From positions 1-64,000 of IMG/VR virus record IMGVR_UViG_3300027749_002876: DNA of 64,000 nt, one strand, 5' to 3'. A program made the position numbers and the translations under genes. The notes beneath the pieces were generated by a model, which was not told the origin of the DNA, searched no databases, and saw nothing but the letters and a program-made list of their open reading frames with translations. How positions within the stretch are numbered: the first letter of the stretch is position 1; the number at the start of each line of letters is the position of its first letter. This document shows, in pieces, positions 6,597 through 14,514 of this stretch.

Positions 6597-6617
6597 AGCC
6601 CCGAAAGGGGCTTTTTT
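6597..6617 (+). terminator. intrinsic terminator
   Basis: AGCCCC-GAAA-GGGGCT followed by a T run. Confidence 0.9.
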
Positions 6618-6654
6618 AATGACTATACTAAATACACTAAAGGGAAATAACAAT

Positions 6655-6747: not shown

Positions 6748-6764
6748 GTATTGATAAATACTTG

Positions 6765-8807
6765 ATGAACTTAAAAGAGCTTGATTCCTTCAAAATATCT
6801 GACGCCGTCACTTTCCATGACAAGCTTAACCCTGCGTTGTGGGCAGGAAATAAATTGCGTCCTGAAGTTAAAAATCAACTAGAAGAAATAGCAAAAGACT
6901 TCCTAGAAGAAATGGGTATCAATGATTTAGATGTTAGAGATATTACTATCTCTGGGTCTAACGCCGCATACAGTTATACAAAACACAGTGACTTGGATTT
7001 ACATCTCTTAGTCAATATAAATGATTTACCTAATAATGATATATACCGTGAATTCTTTGACGCAAAGAAATCATTATACAACGATAACCATGATATAACT
7101 ATTCATGGGGTTCCCGTAGAGTTATATATACAAGATGCCGCACAACCATCAGTGTCGTTAGGAGAATACAGTTTACAAAATGATAAGTGGTTGCGTATTC
7201 CTACAAAGCGTAGAGCTAACTTTGACCAATCAGCTACAAGATTGAAGTATGAAAAATTACTTGATATTGTAGAAAGAGCATTAGACTCAAAGAACTTAAC
7301 TAAAATTCAAAAAGTATTAAAGAAGATTAAGCAATATCGTCAAGCCGGGTTAGATAAAGGTGGCGAGTTTGGTCCTGAGAATTTAGCATATAAAGCATTG
7401 CGTAGTCAGGGGTATATTACAAAATTACACGATTTAAAAAACAAGTTGCATAGTGAGGTATTAACCATTGAAACTATGTATCAAAACATTGATGAAACCT
7501 TTGACCAACCTTATAAACTTAAATGGGAAAAAAGTGATTACGGTGACGTTGATGCCTATGCTAAAATGGATGATGGTAATTATCTAAGTATTATGTTCAA
7601 CAAAGGATATAATCAAGATAAGGAAGAAGCATGGAGTGTTGAGTTCTACAGAAACAACAGCCAAGAAGTTACCGGTGAGGGTGATGCACAACGTGTATTT
7701 GCTACTGTATTAAGTGCTATTCAAACATTCATTAAAAAATACAAGCCCAACAAAGTAATCTTTTCAGCTAGTAAAGAAGTTGAAGATGGACAAAACTCAG
7801 AAAGTAGAGCAAGACTATATGATAGTTTAGTTCAGCGTTATGCTAGAGCATGGGGATTTAGAGCATTTCGTGCTGATACTGGTAATAAAGTTATATACGA
7901 ATTAAGTAGAAAGCAACCGGTAGATGAAGATATCAGCCGTAGAGGATTCTTAAAAGGCATGGGCGCGGCAGCGGTAACAGGTAGTGCTAAGGCTGGTCAA
8001 TATCAATCTTCTACTGAAATAAGTCCAGAGCAGATGCAACAAATTTGGAAGCCAAGAAAAGGTGAGTTAGAAACTAGATGCTATGCTATATTAAAATCAT
8101 TTGCTAATAGTATAGCCGAATCGCATCCTGATTGGGTTAAAGTAATTCAAAAAATAAAAGTAAACACTACTTTAGGTGATAAAGTATTTCGTCAAGGAAA
8201 TGCCGCAAATTCTAGAGTATCATCTAGGGTAGTAAATGGTAAACCGATAGGTGTACAAGCCGGTCAAATTGGTATCGAAACAACTGTATTTTGGGATGCT
8301 CCTAATGATACGCTTGCTTTTATTTTAGGTCATGAGTGTGGACATATAATTATGAATCATGGGTTTTCTTTGGCATCTGATGCTAGAAATAATGAACAAG
8401 AAGCAGATATTATTGGAGCCTCTCTTGCTAAAAAAATAGGTTATGACAGGGCTAATTTCTTTAATTTTTTATTCAATGCTAAAGCTGAACAATTAAAAAA
8501 TGGATCACCCAATGATCCTCATTTAGAACCAGTTGATAGAGTAAAGTTTTTGAAAAAGAATGCTGATTTTGAATTATCACATAACACTATACAATATATT
8601 GATTCACTTGCTCAACAACTAAAGCAAGGCTTAGCAGAAGCAAGTGGCTATATCCCTAGTGAAAAAGAAAAAAACGATCCACGTTTTAAGACAGCATTAA
8701 CAGTAGATGTAGGACCATATAGCATCAAAAAGAACGCAAAAGCATTTAGCTGGCTTACATCAAGGGCCGGCATTCCACCAACAGCAAGCCCAAATGGTAA
8801 GGTATGA
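6765..8807 (+). CDS. modular polyprotein: Pol-beta-type nucleotidyltransferase + unknown domain + internal Tat signal and M48-like HExxH peptidase + short tail module
   Basis: GSN...SDLDLH...ELY; SRRGFLK at 7935-7955; HECGH at 8331-8345, EQEAD; start moved to the ATG 4 nt after TAAATA. Confidence 0.75.
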   Translation: MNLKELDSFKISDAVTFHDKLNPALWAGNKLRPEVKNQLEEIAKDFLEEMGINDLDVRDITISGSNAAYSYTKHSDLDLHLLVNINDLPNNDIYREFFDAKKSLYNDNHDITIHGVPVELYIQDAAQPSVSLGEYSLQNDKWLRIPTKRRANFDQSATRLKYEKLLDIVERALDSKNLTKIQKVLKKIKQYRQAGLDKGGEFGPENLAYKALRSQGYITKLHDLKNKLHSEVLTIETMYQNIDETFDQPYKLKWEKSDYGDVDAYAKMDDGNYLSIMFNKGYNQDKEEAWSVEFYRNNSQEVTGEGDAQRVFATVLSAIQTFIKKYKPNKVIFSASKEVEDGQNSESRARLYDSLVQRYARAWGFRAFRADTGNKVIYELSRKQPVDEDISRRGFLKGMGAAAVTGSAKAGQYQSSTEISPEQMQQIWKPRKGELETRCYAILKSFANSIAESHPDWVKVIQKIKVNTTLGDKVFRQGNAANSRVSSRVVNGKPIGVQAGQIGIETTVFWDAPNDTLAFILGHECGHIIMNHGFSLASDARNNEQEADIIGASLAKKIGYDRANFFNFLFNAKAEQLKNGSPNDPHLEPVDRVKFLKKNADFELSHNTIQYIDSLAQQLKQGLAEASGYIPSEKEKNDPRFKTALTVDVGPYSIKKNAKAFSWLTSRAGIPPTASPNGKV

Positions 8808-10006
8808 ACGATACTATTTGTAAATATGTATTCAATAGTATCACCATATCAAACAGCGGAACAGTAGACCCTTGTTGTGCACCAAATGGCCCGCATACTA
8901 AAGTATACCATGATAAAATAAAAAATCCTTTAGTTATACATGATGACTTTAATGAGGTATTGAACAACACCCAAATAGTTAATCTTAGAAAATCAATGGT
9001 TGCCGGAGAAAAAAATTCACTATGCGATACATGTTGGCAGAGTGAAAGAATTAATGGTGAGAGTGAGAGAACTTTAGGAAATACAAATTTACGAAATTCT
9101 GATGTATATAACAAAATAATTGATTTTTCAAATATATTTCATATTAACTTATTTTTAGGAAATAAATGTAATTTAGCATGTAGAATGTGTAGTCCTTGGT
9201 GCAGTTCATTAATAGCAAAACAAACTGACATTATTTACCAACGACCACCTACACCAATTATTCAATTTAATGATGATACTCAACAAAGAATCATTGAATT
9301 TATAGACAATAGTGAAAACTTAGAAAAAATTCATATGTATGGTGGTGAACCATTAATAAATGATTTCTATGATTTAATTTGCTCACATTTAATAGCTAAT
9401 GGAAGAGCCTCAAAAATCACATTGGATCTTTCAACTAATCTGCAAGTTGATTTAGAAAGAAAAAATGAATTACATCGTCACTTTAAGAATGTACACATTG
9501 CAGTAAGTGTAGACGGTGAGGGGGATACATATGAGTACATCAGATGGCCCGGTAATTGGAATAAAATACAAAATAACTTAAAAATATTAAGTAATACTAG
9601 GAACGATTTCCATGTCTCATCAGTAGTACAAAATTTAAATATTGATAATCTGTCAAATTTGATGGTATATTTAAGCACCATTGAAAATTTTAAATATCAA
9701 AATAGTACATACCGCAAAGTAACTAGTCACACCAATATAAATGATATTAAAATTATACCAACATGGGTTATAGAGCGTGAAATAGATCGTTTAAAAGCAT
9801 TAAATCAAAACATGAATTATACTATACATGCTTTAGTTAAGATGCTAGAAGCCGAAGTTGAACCATCACGTAACTTAGCATACGAAGAAGTTGCTACTTT
9901 CTTCAAACAACAGAAAGATTGGGATTCTCTTAGAAATCAAAATCTTTTTAAAACAAAGCCTCATTTTTTAGAGTTGGCCAAGCAATTTAACATCGAACCC
10001 TGGTAA
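8804..10006 (+). CDS. radical SAM protein with N-terminal SPASM/twitch-like Cys cluster
   Basis: CNLACRMC, GGEP, N-terminal C...CC...CxxC. Confidence 0.85.
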   Translation: MNDTICKYVFNSITISNSGTVDPCCAPNGPHTKVYHDKIKNPLVIHDDFNEVLNNTQIVNLRKSMVAGEKNSLCDTCWQSERINGESERTLGNTNLRNSDVYNKIIDFSNIFHINLFLGNKCNLACRMCSPWCSSLIAKQTDIIYQRPPTPIIQFNDDTQQRIIEFIDNSENLEKIHMYGGEPLINDFYDLICSHLIANGRASKITLDLSTNLQVDLERKNELHRHFKNVHIAVSVDGEGDTYEYIRWPGNWNKIQNNLKILSNTRNDFHVSSVVQNLNIDNLSNLMVYLSTIENFKYQNSTYRKVTSHTNINDIKIIPTWVIEREIDRLKALNQNMNYTIHALVKMLEAEVEPSRNLAYEEVATFFKQQKDWDSLRNQNLFKTKPHFLELAKQFNIEPW

Positions 10007-10057
10007 GTTCTAATTGATATGGTATTTGATAAATACTACATAACTTTGGAATTCGCT

Positions 10058-10855
10058 ATGAAAATCAATCAAATCGTACAAGAAACTACTACATCGGGAT
10101 CCGTTGCCCCAGTAGAGCATAGTTTTGTCAAAATGCAAACTCGCAGTCCTAGTGTCTATGGAAATACAAAAGCAGGATCACTATTCAAAGGTAAAAAGAC
10201 TAGTAAGCCTTTTGCTAACAGCATCAATGAGGGAGCAATGAACCAACTTTCAATGGACTTGAAAGGTGGAGTTGATGGATTATCTGACGAAGAATTTCAA
10301 AAGAAATATAAGATGACTAAGCAAGAAGCTCGCAAAGAGTTGACCGCTAATAGAAAAGACAACAAGAAGCCTGAAAAAGTTAACGAAGCTGACTTACAAG
10401 AAGATGATATCATAGTAGTTCCTGGTTATGGCCGCACGAGAAAAACTGGATTTACAAAGCATGGTCAAAGTCGTGTTGACCATGAAGTTGAAATGGCACG
10501 TAGTGATGTACTAGCTACAATGAAGAATGCCAGAGTAATCTACGAACTATTAAAAAATAAGTCAGAAGAAGAAGGATTAGAAGGCTGGGTACAAGAAAAA
10601 CTTATCAAAGCAAACGATTATCTAAACGCAGTAAAAGAATACTACGATGAAAAATTAATGCAACGAGAAGGCAAGATTGACTTTGCTAAAAAGATACAAA
10701 AAAACGTAGACAAGAGTAACAAGGCAGTAGTAAAGACTAGTAAAGAAGTTGGCTCAAGAGTTGCTGATATTGGTGCAGGTGGCAAAGAATATAATGTCAA
10801 AACTGACAAAGCATGGGATGATGCACACAAAGCTAAAGAAAGTAAAACAAAATGA
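10058..10855 (+). CDS. modular putative head-internal protein
   Basis: MKINQIVQE N-terminus; INE/VNE/LQE junctions; TAAATA upstream; start refined from 10019. Confidence 0.65.
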   Translation: MKINQIVQETTTSGSVAPVEHSFVKMQTRSPSVYGNTKAGSLFKGKKTSKPFANSINEGAMNQLSMDLKGGVDGLSDEEFQKKYKMTKQEARKELTANRKDNKKPEKVNEADLQEDDIIVVPGYGRTRKTGFTKHGQSRVDHEVEMARSDVLATMKNARVIYELLKNKSEEEGLEGWVQEKLIKANDYLNAVKEYYDEKLMQREGKIDFAKKIQKNVDKSNKAVVKTSKEVGSRVADIGAGGKEYNVKTDKAWDDAHKAKESKTK

Positions 10856-13800
10856 GTAGCATTTTAAAAGGTTTACAACTAAACGAATTATCTAATAAAA
10901 AATTAGGTGACTACAAAACAGCCGCAGGTGCTGATGCTACTGCCGCTGATAAAGAAGGTAACTATAAGCGTGGCGACAAGCGTATGAGTGGTATTATCAA
11001 AGCAACTAAGAAACAGTTTGCTAATGATGAAAGAAAAAAAGATGTGACAGAAACAGGCATTCCATTTCGTGGAGTGGGCGGCGCATTCAATCGCGGTGAT
11101 GATGAGCGACATGATTTAGATGTACCAAAACAAGTAAGACCTCAAGTTTGGGGCTTAAAGATCAATGGCAAAGTATGGAGCAAAGGTGGAAAATCAGTTA
11201 CATTCAATAGTAAAGACGCTGCCTTGAATATAAGAAATTCTATATTAAAGAATCGTCCTGATTTAGAAATTGGTTTAATAACTAAGGGCGGACAACAAGG
11301 TATGGCGGAAGCCACTGGTGATAAACCTTTTGACAATATGATGAAGAACATATCAAAAGGTACTAATAAACAAAAAACCTTAGACCGCAAGGAACAGCAA
11401 AAACAAACTCAACAACGAGCACGTGATGCTTTTGACAATATGTTTGGTGGTGGCAATCCTGCAGACAAATTAAAAATTAGAGAGCAAGGTGTGGCGGAAG
11501 GCTCAACTAACAGTAAATCAATAATTACTGAAACACGCACATACAAGTTATGGGAAAGTGCTGGTAAGAAGTTATATGAAGCACAACTAACAGCCGATCA
11601 AATTAATCAAATTTTTCAACAAGTAGAACAGGGTGCAACAGCGGCTGGCGGTAATCGCACTATGCTTGGCAGAGGCAAAGATGCTACTGCCGCTATAAGT
11701 AAAGCCTGGGAAGAGTTAAAAACTAAAGTACAAAATTCAGGACCTATTAAAGGTGTTGACGCTATGTATGACAAGGCTGCTGAACAATTAAAACAAGCAA
11801 CTGGTGGCGATCAAGGTGTCATGCAGTATGTTCAGAAGTATCGTGATTTTGCTAAAAAACATCCAATTGCACAGAGTTTAATTTATTCAGCATTGATTGC
11901 GGCTGCTGGTATTTCAGGTGCAGGTATTGGTGGTGCAGCCGCATTAGGTCTATTCAAACTAGTAGACAAACTATTGCAAGGCGAAAAGTTCAGTAGTGCC
12001 GCATACGCCGGTGCTAAAACTGGTGGCATGGCTTATGCCGCTGGCCAGATTGGTCAAGCGTTAAAAGGTACGCCTCAACAAGAATTACCCGGAGCACAAG
12101 GAGCACCTGGTCAATCTGAACTAGATCAAATCTATATGAATCGTGCTCAAGGGATGCAAGGCTCGGGTTATACGCAAACTGCAACTGGTCAAACAGGTGA
12201 CTTTGGACAACCAACATATAATATTATACCAGATGGTGGTGGTAGTTCGTATGACCAAGCATTCAAACAAGGTCTTGCAAAGTTTGCTGTCAACCCTAGT
12301 AACCCAAGCGCAAACGATATAATGCGAGCCAAAGACTATGCAGGAAAAGTAGCTTCTGGTATGCTTAAGCCTGTTAAGGAATCAGTAGAACTAACTGAAA
12401 GTCAAATCTTCTTACTGATCGGTAAGATAGTTGAACGTCACCGCAAACTTGATGAAGGGATCATGGACACCATCAAAGGCGCCGCAGGTAAGGCAGTTGA
12501 CTGGGCCAAGACCAAAGGCACTAACTTAACAACTAAAGTTACTGCTGACAAACTATTACAAGCATGGAAGAAAGCAGGTAGCCCAACTGACAGCTTAGAC
12601 ATTGCTAGTATTGTTCAACGAGCTGGCGTGCCAACAGCTACTATTAAACAAGTGTTTACTAACATGAAAATACCAGTGCCAGGTCAACCAGCAGTGGCAG
12701 CAACACCAGGTCAACCAGCAGTGGCAGCAACACCAGGTGCTAAACCAGCAGTGGCAGCAACACCAGGTGCTAAACCAGCAGTGGCAGCAACACCAGGTGC
12801 TAAACCAATTCAGACAACTACACCAGCTATAGTATCAGCACCGGCGGCAGCACCTGCAACCAAAATGGCAGTTCCTGCTCAAAAAACAACTATACCTCAA
12901 GTAGCACCTGTGGCTAAAGCGGCCGGAGCTACAGCACCTCAGGGGTTTAATGCTAGTAATGTAATGAAGATGCCTGGTATGGAAAAGTACGCTAAACCAG
13001 CAGTTGCAAAACCTGCGAATTTCAGCGGTGGCCCAACTGGTTACTCTAGTATGAATACTACATTTAAACAACCAGCAGTAAAACCAGCAATGGCAGCAAC
13101 ACCAGGTGCTAAACCAGCAGTGGCAGCAACACCTGTTGCACGTGTAGCAGAGGAATGGAGTCAAAAATACAAAAGCAGTATCAACTGTAGCCACCCCAAA
13201 GGCTTCTCACAAAAAGCTCACTGTGCTGGCAAGAAAAAGCATAATGAAAGTATTGAGATGGAAATGGTCTGTGAGGATTGCGGAATGTGTCAAACACACG
13301 GAGATCATTCACATGACAACTTAGAAGAAGCCTGTTGGAAAGGTTATCACAAAGAGGGTAACAAAAAGATGTTTGGAAAACAATATCCAGACTGTAGAAA
13401 GAATACAAAGGAAGGTGTGGCGAAGGGCCTATCAGAAATGGACAAATCACAAACTCCGCCAGGACGAGACGGTCACGTAAGTCATGGCACATACGGTTCG
13501 AGAGACAAGAAAGATCCAGATTCTGGTAAGAAGCAATACTACGGCAAAATGGAACGCCCTGAAAAAACAACCAAAACGGCATCGGATATTCTTAACAAAG
13601 CATTTAATAAAGGTGTAGCGGAAGAACAACATAGTTGCCCACATTGCGGTGGCGAGATGGTCAGTGAAGAACTAATGAACGAAAAGAAAGATGCTTGCTA
13701 CTACAAAGTCAAGAGCCGTTATAGTGTATGGCCTAGTGCTTACGCTAGTGGTGCATTAGTCAAGTGTCGTAAAAAAGGCGCAAGCAACTGGGGCAACGGC

Positions 13801-14514
13801 GGCAAGAAGAATGAGAGTTCTATTTTAGAAGGTATTGAACAAGCAGATGAAAGTTTACATGATTGGTTCAATAAAGAAAAATGGGTTCGCATGGATACTA
13901 AAGGAAAGATTAAAGGTCCATGTGCAAGAGAACCAGGAGAAGGTAAACCAAAATGTTTGCCACAAGCAAAAGCGCATAGCCTAGGTAAAAAAGGTCGTGC
14001 AAGTGCCGCACAACGCAAACGCAGAGAAGATCCTAATCCAGACCGGCATGGTTCAGCTATAAATGTCAACACAAAGAAAAAATCTAACGAAAATATAGGC
14101 GAGGGTTGGAGAGAAAAACTAGGCGCAGCCGCATTAGCCGGTTCTATGGCATTAGGCGCAGCCGGTGCACATGCTAGAGTTACCCCTGATGGACAAGGTG
14201 GCTTTACCGGTGGATTAAAACCCACAGCAACCGTGACAGCACCAGATAATACTCCATCTGCTACCGCACCTACTGCTTCATCTGACACATCAGATCCTTT
14301 TAAAGGTTTAGTCCGTGCTGATAGTGCCGATAGACAAGCAAAGACTATAACTGTTGACGGAAAAGAGTATGGACTTGTTGAAATATCCCCAACTGATATT
14401 AGACCACGTGGTGGACAACGAATCGTTGTTCCTCAAGCAGTATTAGGAGAACGAGGTATAGGAAACTATACAGGTATTCTAGTAGGTGATAGAGTATTTG
14501 TTATAAGTAAGTAA
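10852..14514 (+). CDS. 1220-aa modular polyprotein, putative head-internal/ejected cargo
   Basis: many short basic or Cys-containing modules separated by GVAE/LEE/MNE/LDE-type sites; hydrophobic segment; internal signal-like peptide. Confidence 0.7.
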   Translation: MSSILKGLQLNELSNKKLGDYKTAAGADATAADKEGNYKRGDKRMSGIIKATKKQFANDERKKDVTETGIPFRGVGGAFNRGDDERHDLDVPKQVRPQVWGLKINGKVWSKGGKSVTFNSKDAALNIRNSILKNRPDLEIGLITKGGQQGMAEATGDKPFDNMMKNISKGTNKQKTLDRKEQQKQTQQRARDAFDNMFGGGNPADKLKIREQGVAEGSTNSKSIITETRTYKLWESAGKKLYEAQLTADQINQIFQQVEQGATAAGGNRTMLGRGKDATAAISKAWEELKTKVQNSGPIKGVDAMYDKAAEQLKQATGGDQGVMQYVQKYRDFAKKHPIAQSLIYSALIAAAGISGAGIGGAAALGLFKLVDKLLQGEKFSSAAYAGAKTGGMAYAAGQIGQALKGTPQQELPGAQGAPGQSELDQIYMNRAQGMQGSGYTQTATGQTGDFGQPTYNIIPDGGGSSYDQAFKQGLAKFAVNPSNPSANDIMRAKDYAGKVASGMLKPVKESVELTESQIFLLIGKIVERHRKLDEGIMDTIKGAAGKAVDWAKTKGTNLTTKVTADKLLQAWKKAGSPTDSLDIASIVQRAGVPTATIKQVFTNMKIPVPGQPAVAATPGQPAVAATPGAKPAVAATPGAKPAVAATPGAKPIQTTTPAIVSAPAAAPATKMAVPAQKTTIPQVAPVAKAAGATAPQGFNASNVMKMPGMEKYAKPAVAKPANFSGGPTGYSSMNTTFKQPAVKPAMAATPGAKPAVAATPVARVAEEWSQKYKSSINCSHPKGFSQKAHCAGKKKHNESIEMEMVCEDCGMCQTHGDHSHDNLEEACWKGYHKEGNKKMFGKQYPDCRKNTKEGVAKGLSEMDKSQTPPGRDGHVSHGTYGSRDKKDPDSGKKQYYGKMERPEKTTKTASDILNKAFNKGVAEEQHSCPHCGGEMVSEELMNEKKDACYYKVKSRYSVWPSAYASGALVKCRKKGASNWGNGGKKNESSILEGIEQADESLHDWFNKEKWVRMDTKGKIKGPCAREPGEGKPKCLPQAKAHSLGKKGRASAAQRKRREDPNPDRHGSAINVNTKKKSNENIGEGWREKLGAAALAGSMALGAAGAHARVTPDGQGGFTGGLKPTATVTAPDNTPSATAPTASSDTSDPFKGLVRADSADRQAKTITVDGKEYGLVEISPTDIRPRGGQRIVVPQAVLGERGIGNYTGILVGDRVFVISK
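12679..12807 (+). repeat. in-frame tandem repeat, 27/30-nt units encoding PG(Q/AK)PAVAAT; further copies at 13081-13134
   Basis: ccaggtcaaccagcagtggcagcaaca x2 then ccaggtgctaaaccagcagtggcagcaaca x2.5. Confidence 0.95.

What the first reader, a model, noticed from the sequence alone, without database searches (positions are those of the whole stretch)
11296..13626. Module junction 'GVAE' is conserved at the DNA level, a candidate recombination site for cassette shuffling
Seen: caaggtatggcggaagcc (11296), caaggtgtggcggaaggc (11485), gaaggtgtggcgaagggc (13411) and aaaggtgtagcggaagaa (13609), with decayed versions at 8625 (caaggcttagcagaa) and about 11038. All four strong copies keep GGT and the GCG Ala codon, although this gene mostly uses GCA/GCT. 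The 13411 copy keeps the DNA motif despite losing the Glu (GVAK) and is followed by LSE. Inference: the roughly 18-bp motif serves both as a protease site and as a crossover point where in-frame cargo modules are gained or lost, like an integron operating inside a protein.
Basis: partly seen in the sequence, partly recalled or inferred. Interest (0 to 1): 0.72.

Follow-up and report, generated by a model that had tools for sequence, protein, structure and literature searches.

The report
Conserved junction word in phage polyprotein
A freshwater jumbo phage related to T4 strings many small cargo proteins into one long protein, and joins them with a "Gly-Val-Ala-Glu" link whose roughly 20-base DNA spelling is kept almost letter for letter in hundreds of related phages; the link most likely serves both as the cut site for the phage's head protease and as the crossover point where cargo pieces are swapped.

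Summary
GTG is 9.5% of Val codons and GCG 6% of Ala codons in this genome, yet 77 copies with unrelated flanks in related contigs use GTG in 83% and GCG in 82%. Conservation is confined to about 20 nt, (A)AG CAA GGT GTG GCG GAA GGC. The gene is a multi-cassette "polyvalent" protein of an uncultured, roughly 350-kb phage with T4-type core genes. Cassettes have a median length of 79 aa and form at least 157 sequence clusters. The neighbour across a junction differs in about 90% of relatives. Homology breakpoints fall at junction motifs, both in the second genome in the same record and in other lake metagenomes.

Cleavage is inferred, not shown. The phage has a T4 gp21-type prohead protease, its capsid and scaffold proteins carry similar L/V-A-E sites, the family has a short leader ending L-x-E, and every internal twin-arginine signal starts two residues after a junction Glu.

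Crossover within the word is the best explanation but is also not shown directly. The integron analogy fails on mechanism: there is no integrase and no attC-like structure. This is a new variant of known kinds.

The parts
6762..8807 (+). Multi-cassette gene 1 (681 aa). It has a nucleotidyltransferase-like and DUF6934 N-terminal part, then a cassette with a Tat signal and an M48-type metallopeptidase, then a short tail.
   Evidence: Pfam matches. In relative L081 the block 7924-8631 is replaced by 30 aa.
7914..7931 (+). Degenerate junction QPVDE|D, the left edge of the peptidase cassette.
   Evidence: Nucleotide homology with L081 ends at 7923. Sequence checked.
7929..7982 (+). Internal twin-arginine signal DISRRGFLKGMGAAAVTG, starting two residues after the junction Glu.
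   Evidence: Pfam TAT_signal E=9e-4, below the cut-off. It matches the S-R-R-x-F-L-K consensus. All 8 internal Tat signals found in the family follow a junction Glu: six strict-consensus ones lie exactly 2 residues after it, and two (P0018, P0099) follow shortly after.
8256..8366 (+). M48-type zinc peptidase core (HECGH) inside the cassette.
   Evidence: Pfam PF01435, E=1.6e-8.
8625..8642 (+). Decayed junction word CAAGGCTTAGCAGAAGCA (QGLAE|A), the right edge of the peptidase cassette.
   Evidence: Homology with L081 resumes at 8632. It has 6 mismatches to the canonical word.
8804..10006 (+). Radical SAM/SPASM gene lying between the cassette genes. It is not part of the junction system as far as the evidence shows.
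   Evidence: Pfam matches. Absent from L081.
10019..10855 (+). Upstream ORF whose stop overlaps the start of gene 2 (ATGA). It probably starts at 10058 with the leader-like MKINQIVQE.
10852..14514 (+). Multi-cassette gene 2 (1220 aa), the gene of the finding.
   Evidence: There are at least 2348 metagenomic homologues of variable length and domain content.
10852..10887 (+). N-terminal leader MSSILKGLQLNE, which ends in L-x-E. It is a candidate capsid-targeting and propeptide sequence.
   Evidence: The form MS[NKS]ILKG[IL]..NE heads most family members. T4 CTS precedent: PMC9026906.
11038..11055 (+). Decayed junction KDVTE|T.
   Evidence: Homologues have GLAED or GLKED at this position. Metagenome contigs join 11021 to 11482.
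11296..11313 (+). Junction word CAAGGTATGGCGGAAGCC (QGMAE|A).
   Evidence: 2 mismatches to the canonical word.
11485..11502 (+). Canonical junction word CAAGGTGTGGCGGAAGGC (QGVAE|G).
   Evidence: Homology of metagenome contigs ends at 11486 and at 11502/3. The exact 18-mer occurs in at least 120 IMG/VR stretches.
13138..13155 (+). Degenerate junction ARVAE|E, with the DNA word lost.
   Evidence: The 94%-identical relative P0002/L081 becomes homologous exactly here, at nt 13143.
13411..13428 (+). Junction word variant GAAGGTGTGGCGAAGGGC (EGVAK G). The Glu is lost but the DNA word is largely kept, and LSE follows at 13429-13437.
   Evidence: P0002 has the same variant. Relatives lacking the next cassette join here.
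13609..13626 (+). Junction word AAAGGTGTAGCGGAAGAA (KGVAE|E) in front of the conserved C-terminal block.
   Evidence: Nucleotide homology with the orthologue starts at 13610. Twelve different upstream contexts are joined to this block through the word.
13816..13839 (+). SSILEGIE, an internal copy of the leader-like sequence and a possible fossil start of a once separate gene.
   Evidence: Inference only.
14089..14106 (+). Degenerate junction ENIGE|G, followed by a signal-peptide-like hydrophobic stretch at 14107-14172.
   Evidence: One family member starts as a separate ORF at this point (MALGSAGAQARVTP).

Best explanation
ORF 10852..14514 and its neighbour 6762..8807 are cassette polyproteins of an uncultured freshwater jumbo phage with T4-type core genes. 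The proposed mechanism has three parts.

1. Packaging. A short N-terminal leader ending in L-x-E takes the protein into the prohead, as the T4 capsid-targeting sequence does.
2. Processing. The phage's gp21-type prohead protease cuts after the Glu of each G-(V/M/L)-A-E junction. T4 gp21 cuts after L/I-x-E. Cutting releases small cargo proteins (median 79 aa), which are enzymes, binding domains and exported proteins, for delivery with the DNA.
3. Shuffling. The junction is spelled by an almost invariant word of about 20 nt, (A)AG CAA GGT GTG GCG GAA GGC. This word is the only DNA shared between otherwise unrelated cassettes. It therefore acts as microhomology for the phage's own homologous recombination (UvsX/RecA-type and gp46-type genes are present), both between copies in one gene and between co-infecting relatives. 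Each crossover within the word is automatically in frame and rebuilds a cut site, so cassettes are deleted, duplicated, reordered and exchanged. Copies that drift to the preferred codons (GTA, GCA) stop taking part.

What is shown: the word's nucleotide conservation, the cassette architecture, the extreme shuffling, and breakpoints at junction motifs. What is inferred: cleavage, packaging, and crossover within the word.
For: DNA word:
- Rare GTG and GCG codons are used in 80-84% of 132 copies, against backgrounds of 12% and 7%.
- The pattern is the same in 77 copies with unrelated flanks, and information content drops to about 0 outside positions -6 to +14.
- 100 of 101 exact 18-mer matches in IMG/VR are in frame 0 of long ORFs. 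In the same ORFs, 91 copies not used as seeds again use GTG (69/77) and GCG (72/91).
- Within-gene synonymous shuffles do not reproduce the count.
- In 596 Gb of cellular genomes there are only 56 hits, and 53 are in GC-rich genomes.

Shuffling:
- The orthologue in the second genome of the record shares four blocks. Two are in swapped order, and one cassette is replaced by two others between junctions.
- P0002/L081 is 94% identical from RVAE|EW onward and unrelated before it.
- Indel and replacement events have both edges within 8 aa of a strict motif in 13.6% of cases, against 0.9% at random.
- Deletion variants join the two flanking blocks through a single word.
- Across 401 sites in 194 non-redundant ORFs, linkage across the junction is 0.07-0.12.
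- 244 cassettes fall into 157 clusters.
- Lake-metagenome contigs at 90% identity or more break at 11486, 11502/3, 13608 and 13610.

Cleavage:
- A Peptidase_S77 (gp21) gene and a gp23-type capsid gene are present.
- The capsid protein has LLAE|S at aa 41-44, and the scaffold-like ORF has KLAEE, LVAEG, FVAES and QLAES.
- gp21 specificity is L/I-X-E followed by the cut, and the CTS is the first 10 aa of IPIII (PMC9026906).
- The family has a conserved leader.
- All 8 internal Tat signals found follow a junction Glu: six strict-consensus ones lie exactly 2 residues after it, and two (P0018, P0099) follow shortly after.
- Cassettes have stand-alone homologues in T4-like cyanophages.

Recombination genes: a RecA/UvsX-type gene and a Rad50/gp46-like ORF at 343166 (identified by eye).
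Against: - There is no direct evidence of cleavage. No proteome exists, and complex prediction gave no answer.
- There is no direct evidence of crossover within the word. Only assembled contigs could be laid, so circles and rare rearrangements were not testable.
- Breakpoints at junctions are also expected if selection simply removes recombinants that break a domain.
- Many junctions are degenerate and lack the word, yet still mark breakpoints.
- The predicted link between word decay and frozen junctions was not detected. Spearman rho for mismatches to the word against linkage was 0.11, p=0.33, with n=78 sites, only 10 of them decayed.
- About 20 bp is short for efficient RecA-type recombination.
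- The genes lie far from the head-gene cluster, and a late promoter is only suggested.
Confidence: 0.5

Rival explanations
1. The nucleotide word is kept for an RNA-level or translation-level reason. Possibilities include a ribosome pause at rare GUG-GCG codons between domains, a binding site for a regulator or nuclease, or a G-rich structure. Under this reading, cassette shuffling happens by ordinary illegitimate recombination filtered by selection, and the word is not the crossover site.
For: The word is always on the sense strand and in frame, which fits an mRNA-level role as well as it fits a protein-level role. Val and Ala use rare codons. The G-rich core has a somewhat higher predicted pairing probability than its flanks, 0.58 against 0.51. 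When Gly follows, the word has four GG runs (read from the sequence).
Against: - The other word codons (GGT, GAA, CAA) are the commonest ones, so the word is not a rare-codon cluster.
- The flanks are unrelated, so no conserved partner or structure is possible.
- No antisense or complementary copy exists in the record.
- In the few co-inherited strict junctions, word codons are no more conserved (0.61) than flanking synonymous codons (0.63). That argues against site-by-site purifying selection, though it rests on only 5 pairs.
- Random illegitimate joins would not rebuild an exact word at almost every new junction.
Confidence: 0.2
2. The word is a passive relic. All junctions descend from one ancestral linker that spread recently with cassette duplications, and there has not been time for the synonymous sites to drift. 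The DNA spelling has no function.
For: Decay goes towards the genome's preferred codons, and GTA and GCA changes tend to occur together in the same copies (one search list). Co-inherited junctions show no extra conservation.
Against: The flanks on both sides of 77 copies are unrelated at less than 60% nt identity, while the word stays 82-100% conserved per position. The same word is found in loci whose shared blocks are only 68-80% identical in protein and in ORFs with no detectable similarity to this gene family. A recent common origin of hundreds of junctions with no trace in the adjoining sequence itself requires precise recombination at the word.
Confidence: 0.08
3. A dedicated sequence-specific enzyme recognises the word and drives cassette exchange. 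This could be a site-specific recombinase as in integrons, or a homing or nicking endonuclease as in T-even Seg and Mob systems.
For: A conserved asymmetric word of about 20 nt is the size of a homing-endonuclease site. T4-type phages carry many such enzymes, and a GIY-YIG-like ORF follows the capsid gene at G000 356776 (identified by eye).
Against: The record has no tyrosine integrase. No recombinase or endonuclease gene is next to the cassette genes here or in L081; the only nuclease nearby is a non-specific Endonuclease_NS. The word has no inverted repeat or attC-like fold.
Confidence: 0.07
4. GVAE is only a flexible inter-domain linker and is not cleaved. The protein works as one large multidomain polyvalent protein.
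For: Many polyvalent proteins are thought to act, at least partly, uncleaved (PMC5512222). No proteomic data exist for this clade.
Against: Internal Tat signals placed just after the junction Glu only make sense with a free N-terminus. The motif matches the T4 protease rule and the sites in this phage's own capsid and scaffold proteins (PMC9026906). A four-residue motif this strictly kept is not what a passive linker looks like (208 observed, about 10 expected).
Confidence: 0.12

Closest known systems
Polyvalent proteins of phages and conjugative elements (Iyer, Burroughs, Anand, de Souza, Aravind 2017; PMC5512222)
   Same: One polypeptide carries many unrelated small enzymatic and binding domains (ParB-type, nucleotidyltransferase, GNAT, methyltransferase, peptidase, DUFs). 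Mosaicism between relatives is extreme. Delivery with the DNA and processing into separate units are proposed for both.
   Different: In that work, processing is attributed to an embedded zincin-like peptidase domain, and no repeated junction motif or nucleotide-level linker is described. Here the junction is a fixed tetrapeptide matching the prohead protease rule, and it is spelled by a conserved DNA word. The M48 peptidase is itself an optional cassette.
T4 internal proteins, Alt and the capsid-targeting sequence, processed by the gp21 prohead protease (PMC9026906, PMC3012670, PMC5694885)
   Same: Both have a short N-terminal leader ending in (L/I)-x-E, cleavage after Glu by a Peptidase_S77 enzyme, and small, diverse proteins that are packaged and injected as counter-defence. 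The genes lie away from the head-gene cluster in both.
   Different: T4 IPs are separate genes with one leader each. Here up to about 10 cargo units are concatenated in one ORF and separated by internal sites. Packaging and cleavage are not demonstrated for this clade.
Recombination at conserved motifs in T-even tail-fibre adhesins (glycine-rich motifs of gp38, His boxes of gp37; PMC3157838 and Tetart et al. 1996 and 1998 cited there)
   Same: Short conserved motifs separate hypervariable segments within one ORF of T4-type phages, and genetic exchanges occur within or near those motifs.
   Different: The adhesin motifs are structural core elements of a single folded domain, and the swapped segments are loops. 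Here the units are whole independent proteins, their order is free, and the motif is a cut site.
PeSL promoter-stem-loop cassettes of T4-type genomes (PMC2839356, PMC4122927)
   Same: Short repeated DNA elements flank variable genes in T4-type phages and mediate gain, loss and shuffling by recombination between copies.
   Different: PeSLs are intergenic regulatory elements that flank whole genes. The word here is coding, is in frame and lies inside one ORF.
Polymorphic toxin junctions: VENN of CdiA and PxxxxDPxGL of Rhs (PMC3150448)
   Same: A conserved peptide and DNA motif marks the border of a swappable module. Orphan modules keep the motif-coding DNA as a recombination handle. In Rhs the motif region is also a self-cleavage site (from memory).
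   Different: Those systems have one junction and one variable C-terminal toxin per protein, plus an immunity gene. Here there are many junctions per protein, no immunity genes and no nearby orphan arrays.
Integrons (IntI with attI and attC)
   Same: Both hold an open-ended array of promoterless cassettes gained and lost at a repeated site and expressed from one upstream signal.
   Different: This system has no integrase and no folded attC. Its cassettes are in-frame protein segments rather than genes, and expression is by proteolysis of one translation product.

Membership tests
Polyvalent proteins (Iyer et al. 2017) | A single polypeptide of a phage or mobile element combining several unrelated domains typical of conflict systems. 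| tested here: met
   Family members carry ParB_N, CTP_transf_like, GNAT, Polbeta/NTP_transf_2, Methyltransf_23, LysM, TonB_C, M48, DUF5872, DUF6321 and DUF6934 in varying combinations.
Polyvalent proteins (Iyer et al. 2017) | Extensive mosaicism of domain content between close relatives. | tested here: met
Polyvalent proteins (Iyer et al. 2017) | Delivery into the recipient cell together with the DNA. | not testable with these tools
   Inferred only, from the leader and the protease-type sites.
T4-type prohead-protease substrates (CTS-bearing internal proteins) | The phage encodes a gp21-family (Peptidase_S77) prohead protease. | tested here: met
   PF03420 at G000 353734-354165, 94 bits against a cut-off of 27. 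It lies in the second genome of the record; part A is a fragment without the head region.
T4-type prohead-protease substrates (CTS-bearing internal proteins) | Cleavage motif of a hydrophobic residue, any residue, then Glu, with the cut after Glu. | tested here: met
   The junctions are G-[VML]-A-E followed by G, E or A. The rule is L/I-X-E (PMC9026906). Val at P3 is an extension of that rule. The capsid protein of the same record has LLAE|S.
T4-type prohead-protease substrates (CTS-bearing internal proteins) | A short N-terminal targeting propeptide removed at such a site. | tested here: inconclusive
   A conserved 10-12-aa leader, MS[NKS]ILKG[IL]..NE, is present. It has no sequence similarity to the T4 CTS, and its function is untested.
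T4-type prohead-protease substrates (CTS-bearing internal proteins) | Presence of the processed fragments in the virion. | not testable with these tools
   There is no isolate and no proteome. Complex prediction gave no answer.
Integron | An IntI-type tyrosine recombinase. | tested here: not met
   PF00589 has no match in the 524-kb record, and the positive controls were found.
Integron | attC-type imperfect inverted repeats flanking each cassette. | tested here: not met
   The word is asymmetric, and conservation is limited to about 20 nt with unrelated flanks. No reverse-complement copy exists.
Polymorphic toxin cassette systems (CdiA-CT, Rhs-CT) | A conserved junction motif whose coding DNA is shared by swappable modules. 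| tested here: met
Polymorphic toxin cassette systems (CdiA-CT, Rhs-CT) | A C-terminal toxin paired with a cognate immunity gene, and orphan toxin-immunity arrays downstream. | tested here: not met
   The genes downstream are ferritin/Dps, a non-specific endonuclease and others. The C-terminal block is the most conserved part of the protein, not the variable one.
PeSL mobile regulatory cassettes | An intergenic element combining an early promoter and a stem-loop terminator. | tested here: not met
   The word lies inside an ORF, in frame, with no promoter or hairpin.

The most novel reading that the evidence does not exclude
A clade of T4-related jumbo phages keeps a universal 'linker word' of about 20 nt that does two jobs at once. 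As DNA it is a portable in-frame crossover site that lets any cassette recombine next to any other, within a genome and between co-infecting relatives. As protein it is the prohead-protease cut site that turns the resulting chimera back into separate injected effectors, some of which are then exported through Tat. That would make it a self-contained combinatorial system for effector repertoires that needs no dedicated recombinase, with the word's spelling maintained by the turnover itself.
Probability: 0.5. Interest if true: 0.8.

Novelty: new variant of a known kind. Interest (0 to 1): 0.68.

Why it matters
If correct, this shows how large phages can diversify a package of injected proteins very quickly. 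One short sequence guarantees that every recombinant stays in frame and remains processable. The arrangement combines ideas known separately from T4 internal proteins, polyvalent proteins and polymorphic toxins.

It also gives a practical handle. The exact 18-mer finds these genes in metagenomes, with 100 of 101 matches in the expected frame, and it delimits hundreds of small cargo proteins. At least 157 sequence clusters appear in this small sample, and most have unknown function. They are candidates for anti-defence or host-takeover factors.

The conserved word, and the internal Tat signals placed just after the cut site, make both halves of the hypothesis testable with ordinary phage genetics and proteomics. 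The design principle, a protease-site linker that doubles as a recombination site, could also be useful for engineered phage payloads in laboratory strains.

Tried and rejected
- Near-identity search of the gene against deposited phage genomes found no match.
- A self-comparison of the protein was a wasted call.
- Complex prediction of the gp21-like protease with a 30-aa junction peptide returned "no answer" and is not used as evidence.
- RNA structure: partition-function folding of 77 copies showed only the higher pairing expected of a G-rich patch in AT-rich sequence, and no common partner. This reading was set aside.
- Antisense or guide RNA: there is no complementary copy within 4 mismatches anywhere in the record. 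Rejected.
- Chi-like genome-wide signal: no 7-mer of the word is in clear excess outside the cassette genes. GTGGCGG is 55 against 39 expected, and TGTGGCG is depleted. Rejected.
- Internal translation start: the SD-like AAGGTG has no start codon at a usable spacing (read from the sequence). Rejected.
- Rare-codon pause cluster: only two of the six or seven word codons are rare. Not favoured.
- Test of "decayed word equals frozen junction": no significant relation. Co-inherited strict junctions are too few, at 5 pairs. A looser motif definition gave 118 pairs but is confounded by chance [VILM]xE sites inside conserved domains, so it is not used.
- Late promoter: CTAAATAC lies upstream of the head genes and of the cassette-gene cluster but is not enriched genome-wide, at 38 against 36 expected. 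It is kept only as a note.
- Reads: only Logan contigs were available for the runs that hold the locus, so excised circles and rare rearranged molecules could not be looked for.
Full report
1. THE OBSERVATION

The window is the first 64 kb of a 524,565-bp IMG/VR virus record with GC 36.7%. The finding lies in ORF 10852..14514 (+ strand, 1220 aa).

- 11296 CAAGGTATGGCGGAAGCC = QGMAEA
- 11485 CAAGGTGTGGCGGAAGGC = QGVAEG
- 13411 GAAGGTGTGGCGAAGGGC = EGVAKG, followed by LSE
- 13609 AAAGGTGTAGCGGAAGAA = KGVAEE

The decayed copies are also real: 8625 (QGLAEA, in the neighbouring ORF 6762..8807) and 11038 (KDVTET).

Genome-wide codon use is GTG 9.5% of Val, GCG 6.0% of Ala, GGT 58% of Gly and GAA 79% of Glu. 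The gene itself has only 11 GCG among 152 Ala codons, and four of them are in the motifs.

GGTRTRGCGGA occurs 8 times in the record, only in three ORFs. Every match to the 18-mer with 3 or fewer mismatches (8 found, 0.06 expected) is on the sense strand in frame 0 of those ORFs. Shuffling synonymous codons within the gene gives a mean of 0.086 copies against 3 observed, and 0 of 20,000 shuffles reach 3. For the orthologue the figures are 0.14 against 3, with 1 of 20,000.

2. WHAT THE RECORD IS

A self-comparison shows the record to be two related genomes joined together.
- Part A runs from 1 to about 172.9 kb. It contains the window and is collinear with part B, inverted, at about 75-90% nt identity.
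- Part B runs from 172,924 to 520,476 (347.5 kb). It closes on itself through a 4,089-bp repeat at 99.6% identity.

There is one Peptidase_S77 (T4 gp21) gene, one gp23-type capsid gene and one RecA/UvsX-type gene, all in part B. Each part has its own tRNA array. The DNA polymerase is 42-48% identical to those of Rak2-like and other jumbo phages of about 350 kb, and it also matches T4-like phages. Homologues of the gene come from contigs of up to 345-356 kb, and the runs that hold the locus are freshwater and lake metagenomes.

This gives a built-in orthologue for comparison: G000 175621..179142 (- strand, 1173 aa).

3. THE GENE IS A STRING OF CASSETTES

The two orthologues share four blocks:
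- A765-862 = B550-645 (81%)
- A920-1220 = B875-1171 (79%)
- A79-145 = B24-91
- A9-74 = B97-162

The last two blocks are in swapped order. Between the junctions at A855 and A921, gene A has one 67-aa unit, while gene B has two different units, one with a ParB-like DGNHR motif.

A database search returns at least 2348 homologues, all metagenomic and 673-1530 aa long. Their embedded Pfam domains vary: ParB_N, cytidylyltransferase, GNAT, Polbeta nucleotidyltransferase, methyltransferase, LysM, TonB_C, DUF5872, DUF6321 and DUF6934. In the best 120, G[VILM]AE occurs 208 times against about 10 expected, mostly as [QE]GVAE[GEA].

Segments between strict junctions have a median length of 79 aa (interquartile range 63-134). 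The 244 segments fall into 157 clusters, of which 115 are singletons. The C-terminal units have stand-alone homologues in T4-like cyanophages. This is the architecture of polyvalent proteins (PMC5512222), but that paper describes no repeated junction or DNA linker.

4. THE WORD IS CONSERVED AS DNA, NOT ONLY AS PROTEIN

| Codon position | In 132 distinct copies (80 related IMG/VR loci) | Background |
|---|---|---|
| Gly = GGT | 93% | 54% |
| Val = GTG | 80% | 11.7% |
| Ala = GCG | 84% | 6.7% |
| Following Gly = GGC | 75% | 18.6% |

The codon before Gln tends to end in G, against the genome's bias.

I then restricted the set to 77 copies in which both 60-nt flanks are unrelated (less than 60% identity). 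The core (A)AG CAA GGT GTG GCG GAA GGC stays 82-100% conserved per position, and information content falls to about zero outside -6 to +14.

Of 101 matches, 100 are in frame 0 of a long ORF (median open length 548 aa or more, against 35 in the other frames). In those ORFs, 91 further copies that were not used as seeds again use GTG (69/77) and GCG (72/91). Thirteen of the 81 ORFs have no detectable similarity to the 120-protein set but show the same cassette design.

In 596 Gb of cellular genomes the 18-mer occurs 56 times. Fifty-three of these are in GC-rich genomes, consistent with chance, and the two or three AT-rich hits look like mis-binned phage contigs.

5. BREAKPOINTS AND SHUFFLING

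- Nucleotide homology between the two genomes of the record starts at 13610, which is the last word.
- P0002/L081 is 94% identical in protein (88% nt) from RVAE|EW (nt 13143) to the end, and unrelated over the preceding 764 versus 582 aa.
- In ORF 6762..8807 the block carrying a Tat signal and an M48 peptidase (7924-8631) is bounded by QPVDE| and QGLAE|, and L081 has 30 aa in its place.
- Among 1476 distinct indel or replacement events between block pairs of at least 70% identity, both edges lie within 8 aa of a strict motif in 13.6% against 0.9% at random, and at least one edge in 46% against 14%. Many of the other edges carry degenerate versions such as ESVAEE, EDIEEE, GVDEGW and NIGEGW.
- Several relatives (P0033, P0039, P0112) join the A5 block directly to the C-terminal block through one GVAE, where the window has an extra 60-aa cassette between GVAK and GVAE. 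At the DNA level the single word in such a variant combines the left half seen at 13411 with the right half seen at 13609.
- Twelve different upstream contexts are joined to the same C-terminal block through the word.
- Across 401 strict sites in 194 non-redundant ORFs, the same upstream-plus-downstream pair recurs in another ORF at only 30 sites. Where both flanks have at least 2 homologues, linkage is 0.07-0.12, so the neighbour differs about 90% of the time.
- Logan contigs from four other lake metagenomes, laid at 90% identity or more, stop matching or join at 11486, 11502/3, 13608, 13610 and 11504>13610. Because these are contigs, they show mosaicism in relatives but cannot show circles or rare events.

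6. WHY A PROTEASE SITE

The evidence here is indirect.
- T4 gp21 cuts after Glu at L/I-X-E, and the first 10 residues of IPIII act as a capsid-targeting sequence that is then removed (PMC9026906; see also PMC5694885, PMC3012670).
- This phage has a gp21-family protease. Its capsid protein has ...KKQLLAE|SSVG at residues 41-44, and the adjacent scaffold-like ORF has KLAEE, LVAEG, FVAES and QLAES.
- The cassette gene family starts with a conserved 10-12-aa leader, MS[NKS]ILKG[IL]..NE, ending L-x-E. Other members start with similar short leaders ending in Glu.
- The strongest indirect evidence concerns internal twin-arginine signals. All six distinct contexts matching [ST]RRxFL[KR] start exactly two residues after a junction Glu: EVDE|DMSRRGFLKG, QGVAE|DLSRRGFLKG, QGMAE|DMTRRGFLRG and, in the window, QPVDE|DISRRGFLKG. 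Two further RRGFLKG signals (P0018, P0099) lie shortly after a junction-type Glu. A Tat signal needs a free N-terminus, which cleavage at the junction would create.
- The M48 peptidase cannot be the general processing enzyme, because it is an optional cassette.
- A protease-peptide co-fold gave no answer.

7. WHY A CROSSOVER SITE

The argument is inferential. Cassettes on either side of a junction are unrelated, so the word is the only homology available for in-frame joining. Yet new junctions almost always carry an exact word and conservation stops abruptly at its edges, which random illegitimate joins would not produce. The phage has RecA/UvsX-type recombination and no integrase. No recombinase or homing endonuclease lies next to the genes.

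Four alternatives for the DNA-level constraint were examined:
- RNA structure: no signal.
- Antisense partner: none.
- Chi-like distribution of sub-words: none.
- Rare-codon pausing: only two of the word's codons are rare.

In the five co-inherited strict junction pairs, word codons are no better conserved (0.61) than flanking synonymous codons (0.63). This fits maintenance by turnover rather than site-by-site selection, but the sample is very small. The predicted link between word decay and frozen junctions was not detected, and a looser analysis is confounded.

I rate cleavage at the junction at about 0.8, crossover within the word at about 0.55-0.6, and both together at about 0.5.

8. COMPARISON AND NOVELTY

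The parts are known separately:
- polyvalent proteins (PMC5512222);
- T4 internal proteins with a capsid-targeting sequence, processed by gp21 (PMC9026906);
- exchanges at conserved motifs in T-even adhesins (PMC3157838);
- PeSL-mediated shuffling (PMC2839356, PMC4122927);
- junction motifs of polymorphic toxins used as recombination handles (PMC3150448).

What appears new is the combination. One ORF has many junctions, cassette order is free, a cut-site motif is spelled by a near-invariant 20-nt word across hundreds of uncultured phages, and cassettes carry their own export signals just after the cut. A full-text search for GVAE with phage found nothing relevant. I file it as a new variant of known kinds. 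The integron comparison holds as an analogy of logic, not of mechanism.

Noticed in passing
G000 whole record; window = G000:C1:1-64000: The 524,565-bp record looks like two related phage genomes joined. Part A (1 to about 172.9 kb) is an inverted, collinear copy of part B at about 75-90% nt identity. Part B (172,924-520,476, 347.5 kb) closes on itself through a 4,089-bp repeat at 99.6% identity (172924-177012 = 520477-524565). The head protease, capsid and RecA-type genes occur once each, all in part B. The join is probably an assembly or binning chimera, so the 524-kb size should not be taken as a genome size.
   Followed up: partly
G000 115293-126526 (-), 417045-426585 (+), 288480-288896 (-): There are two mirrored tRNA arrays of 31 and 25 genes, one per constituent genome, and a tmRNA with tag ANDSQFSIAA.
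   Followed up: no
window 7929-7982; also P0012, P0018, P0031, P0099, L031, L060, L164: Internal twin-arginine export signals sit immediately after junction Glu residues in several unrelated cassettes (M48 peptidase, TonB_C and others). This implies that some released cargo is sent to the periplasm of the infected cell.
   Followed up: partly
window 8804-10006: A radical SAM gene with an N-terminal SPASM-type Fe-S domain lies between the two cassette genes and is absent from relative L081. Its role is unknown.
   Followed up: no
window 12686-12807 and 13071-13133: 30-nt tandem repeats encoding PAVAATPGAK-type units (4.2 and 2.1 copies) lie inside the largest cassette. That cassette also has a hydrophobic, probably membrane-spanning, stretch.
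   Followed up: no
window 13816-13839: SSILEGIE inside the conserved C-terminal block resembles the gene's own N-terminal leader MSSILKGLQLNE. It may be the fossil start of a once separate leader-bearing gene that was fused into the polyprotein.
   Followed up: no
window 10019-10855 (probable true start 10058): The upstream ORF overlaps the start of the cassette gene (ATGA). It contains MKINQIVQE, a leader type that heads some family members, so three consecutive genes may encode head-targeted proteins.
   Followed up: no
window 6598-6617, 6628-6635, 6655-; G000 347441, 350649: A terminator-like hairpin with a T-run is followed by CTAAATAC and a 30-codon ORF upstream of the cassette-gene cluster. 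The same octamer sits 24-34 nt upstream of two head-region genes, so it may be a late promoter, but it is not enriched genome-wide.
   Followed up: partly
G000, outside the cassette genes: The 7-mer TGTGGCG, at the centre of the word, is about 3.7-fold depleted relative to a Markov expectation (9 against 33). The neighbouring 7-mers are not depleted.
   Followed up: no
G000 177205-177228 (- strand; B protein aa 638-645) and L072 1459-1482: Tandem double junctions, GVAEGVAE, occur with a 12-nt period. The word's ends (cAAGGt ... gAAGGc) repeat each other. These could be empty cassette sites or slipped recombination products.
   Followed up: no
L249 (Bacteroidetes MAG contig, 3 exact words) and L207 (Bdellovibrio MAG contig): Among cellular genome assemblies, these are essentially the only AT-rich contigs with the word in a long open reading frame. 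They are probably phage contigs binned into MAGs and are at best a weak hint to the host.
   Followed up: no
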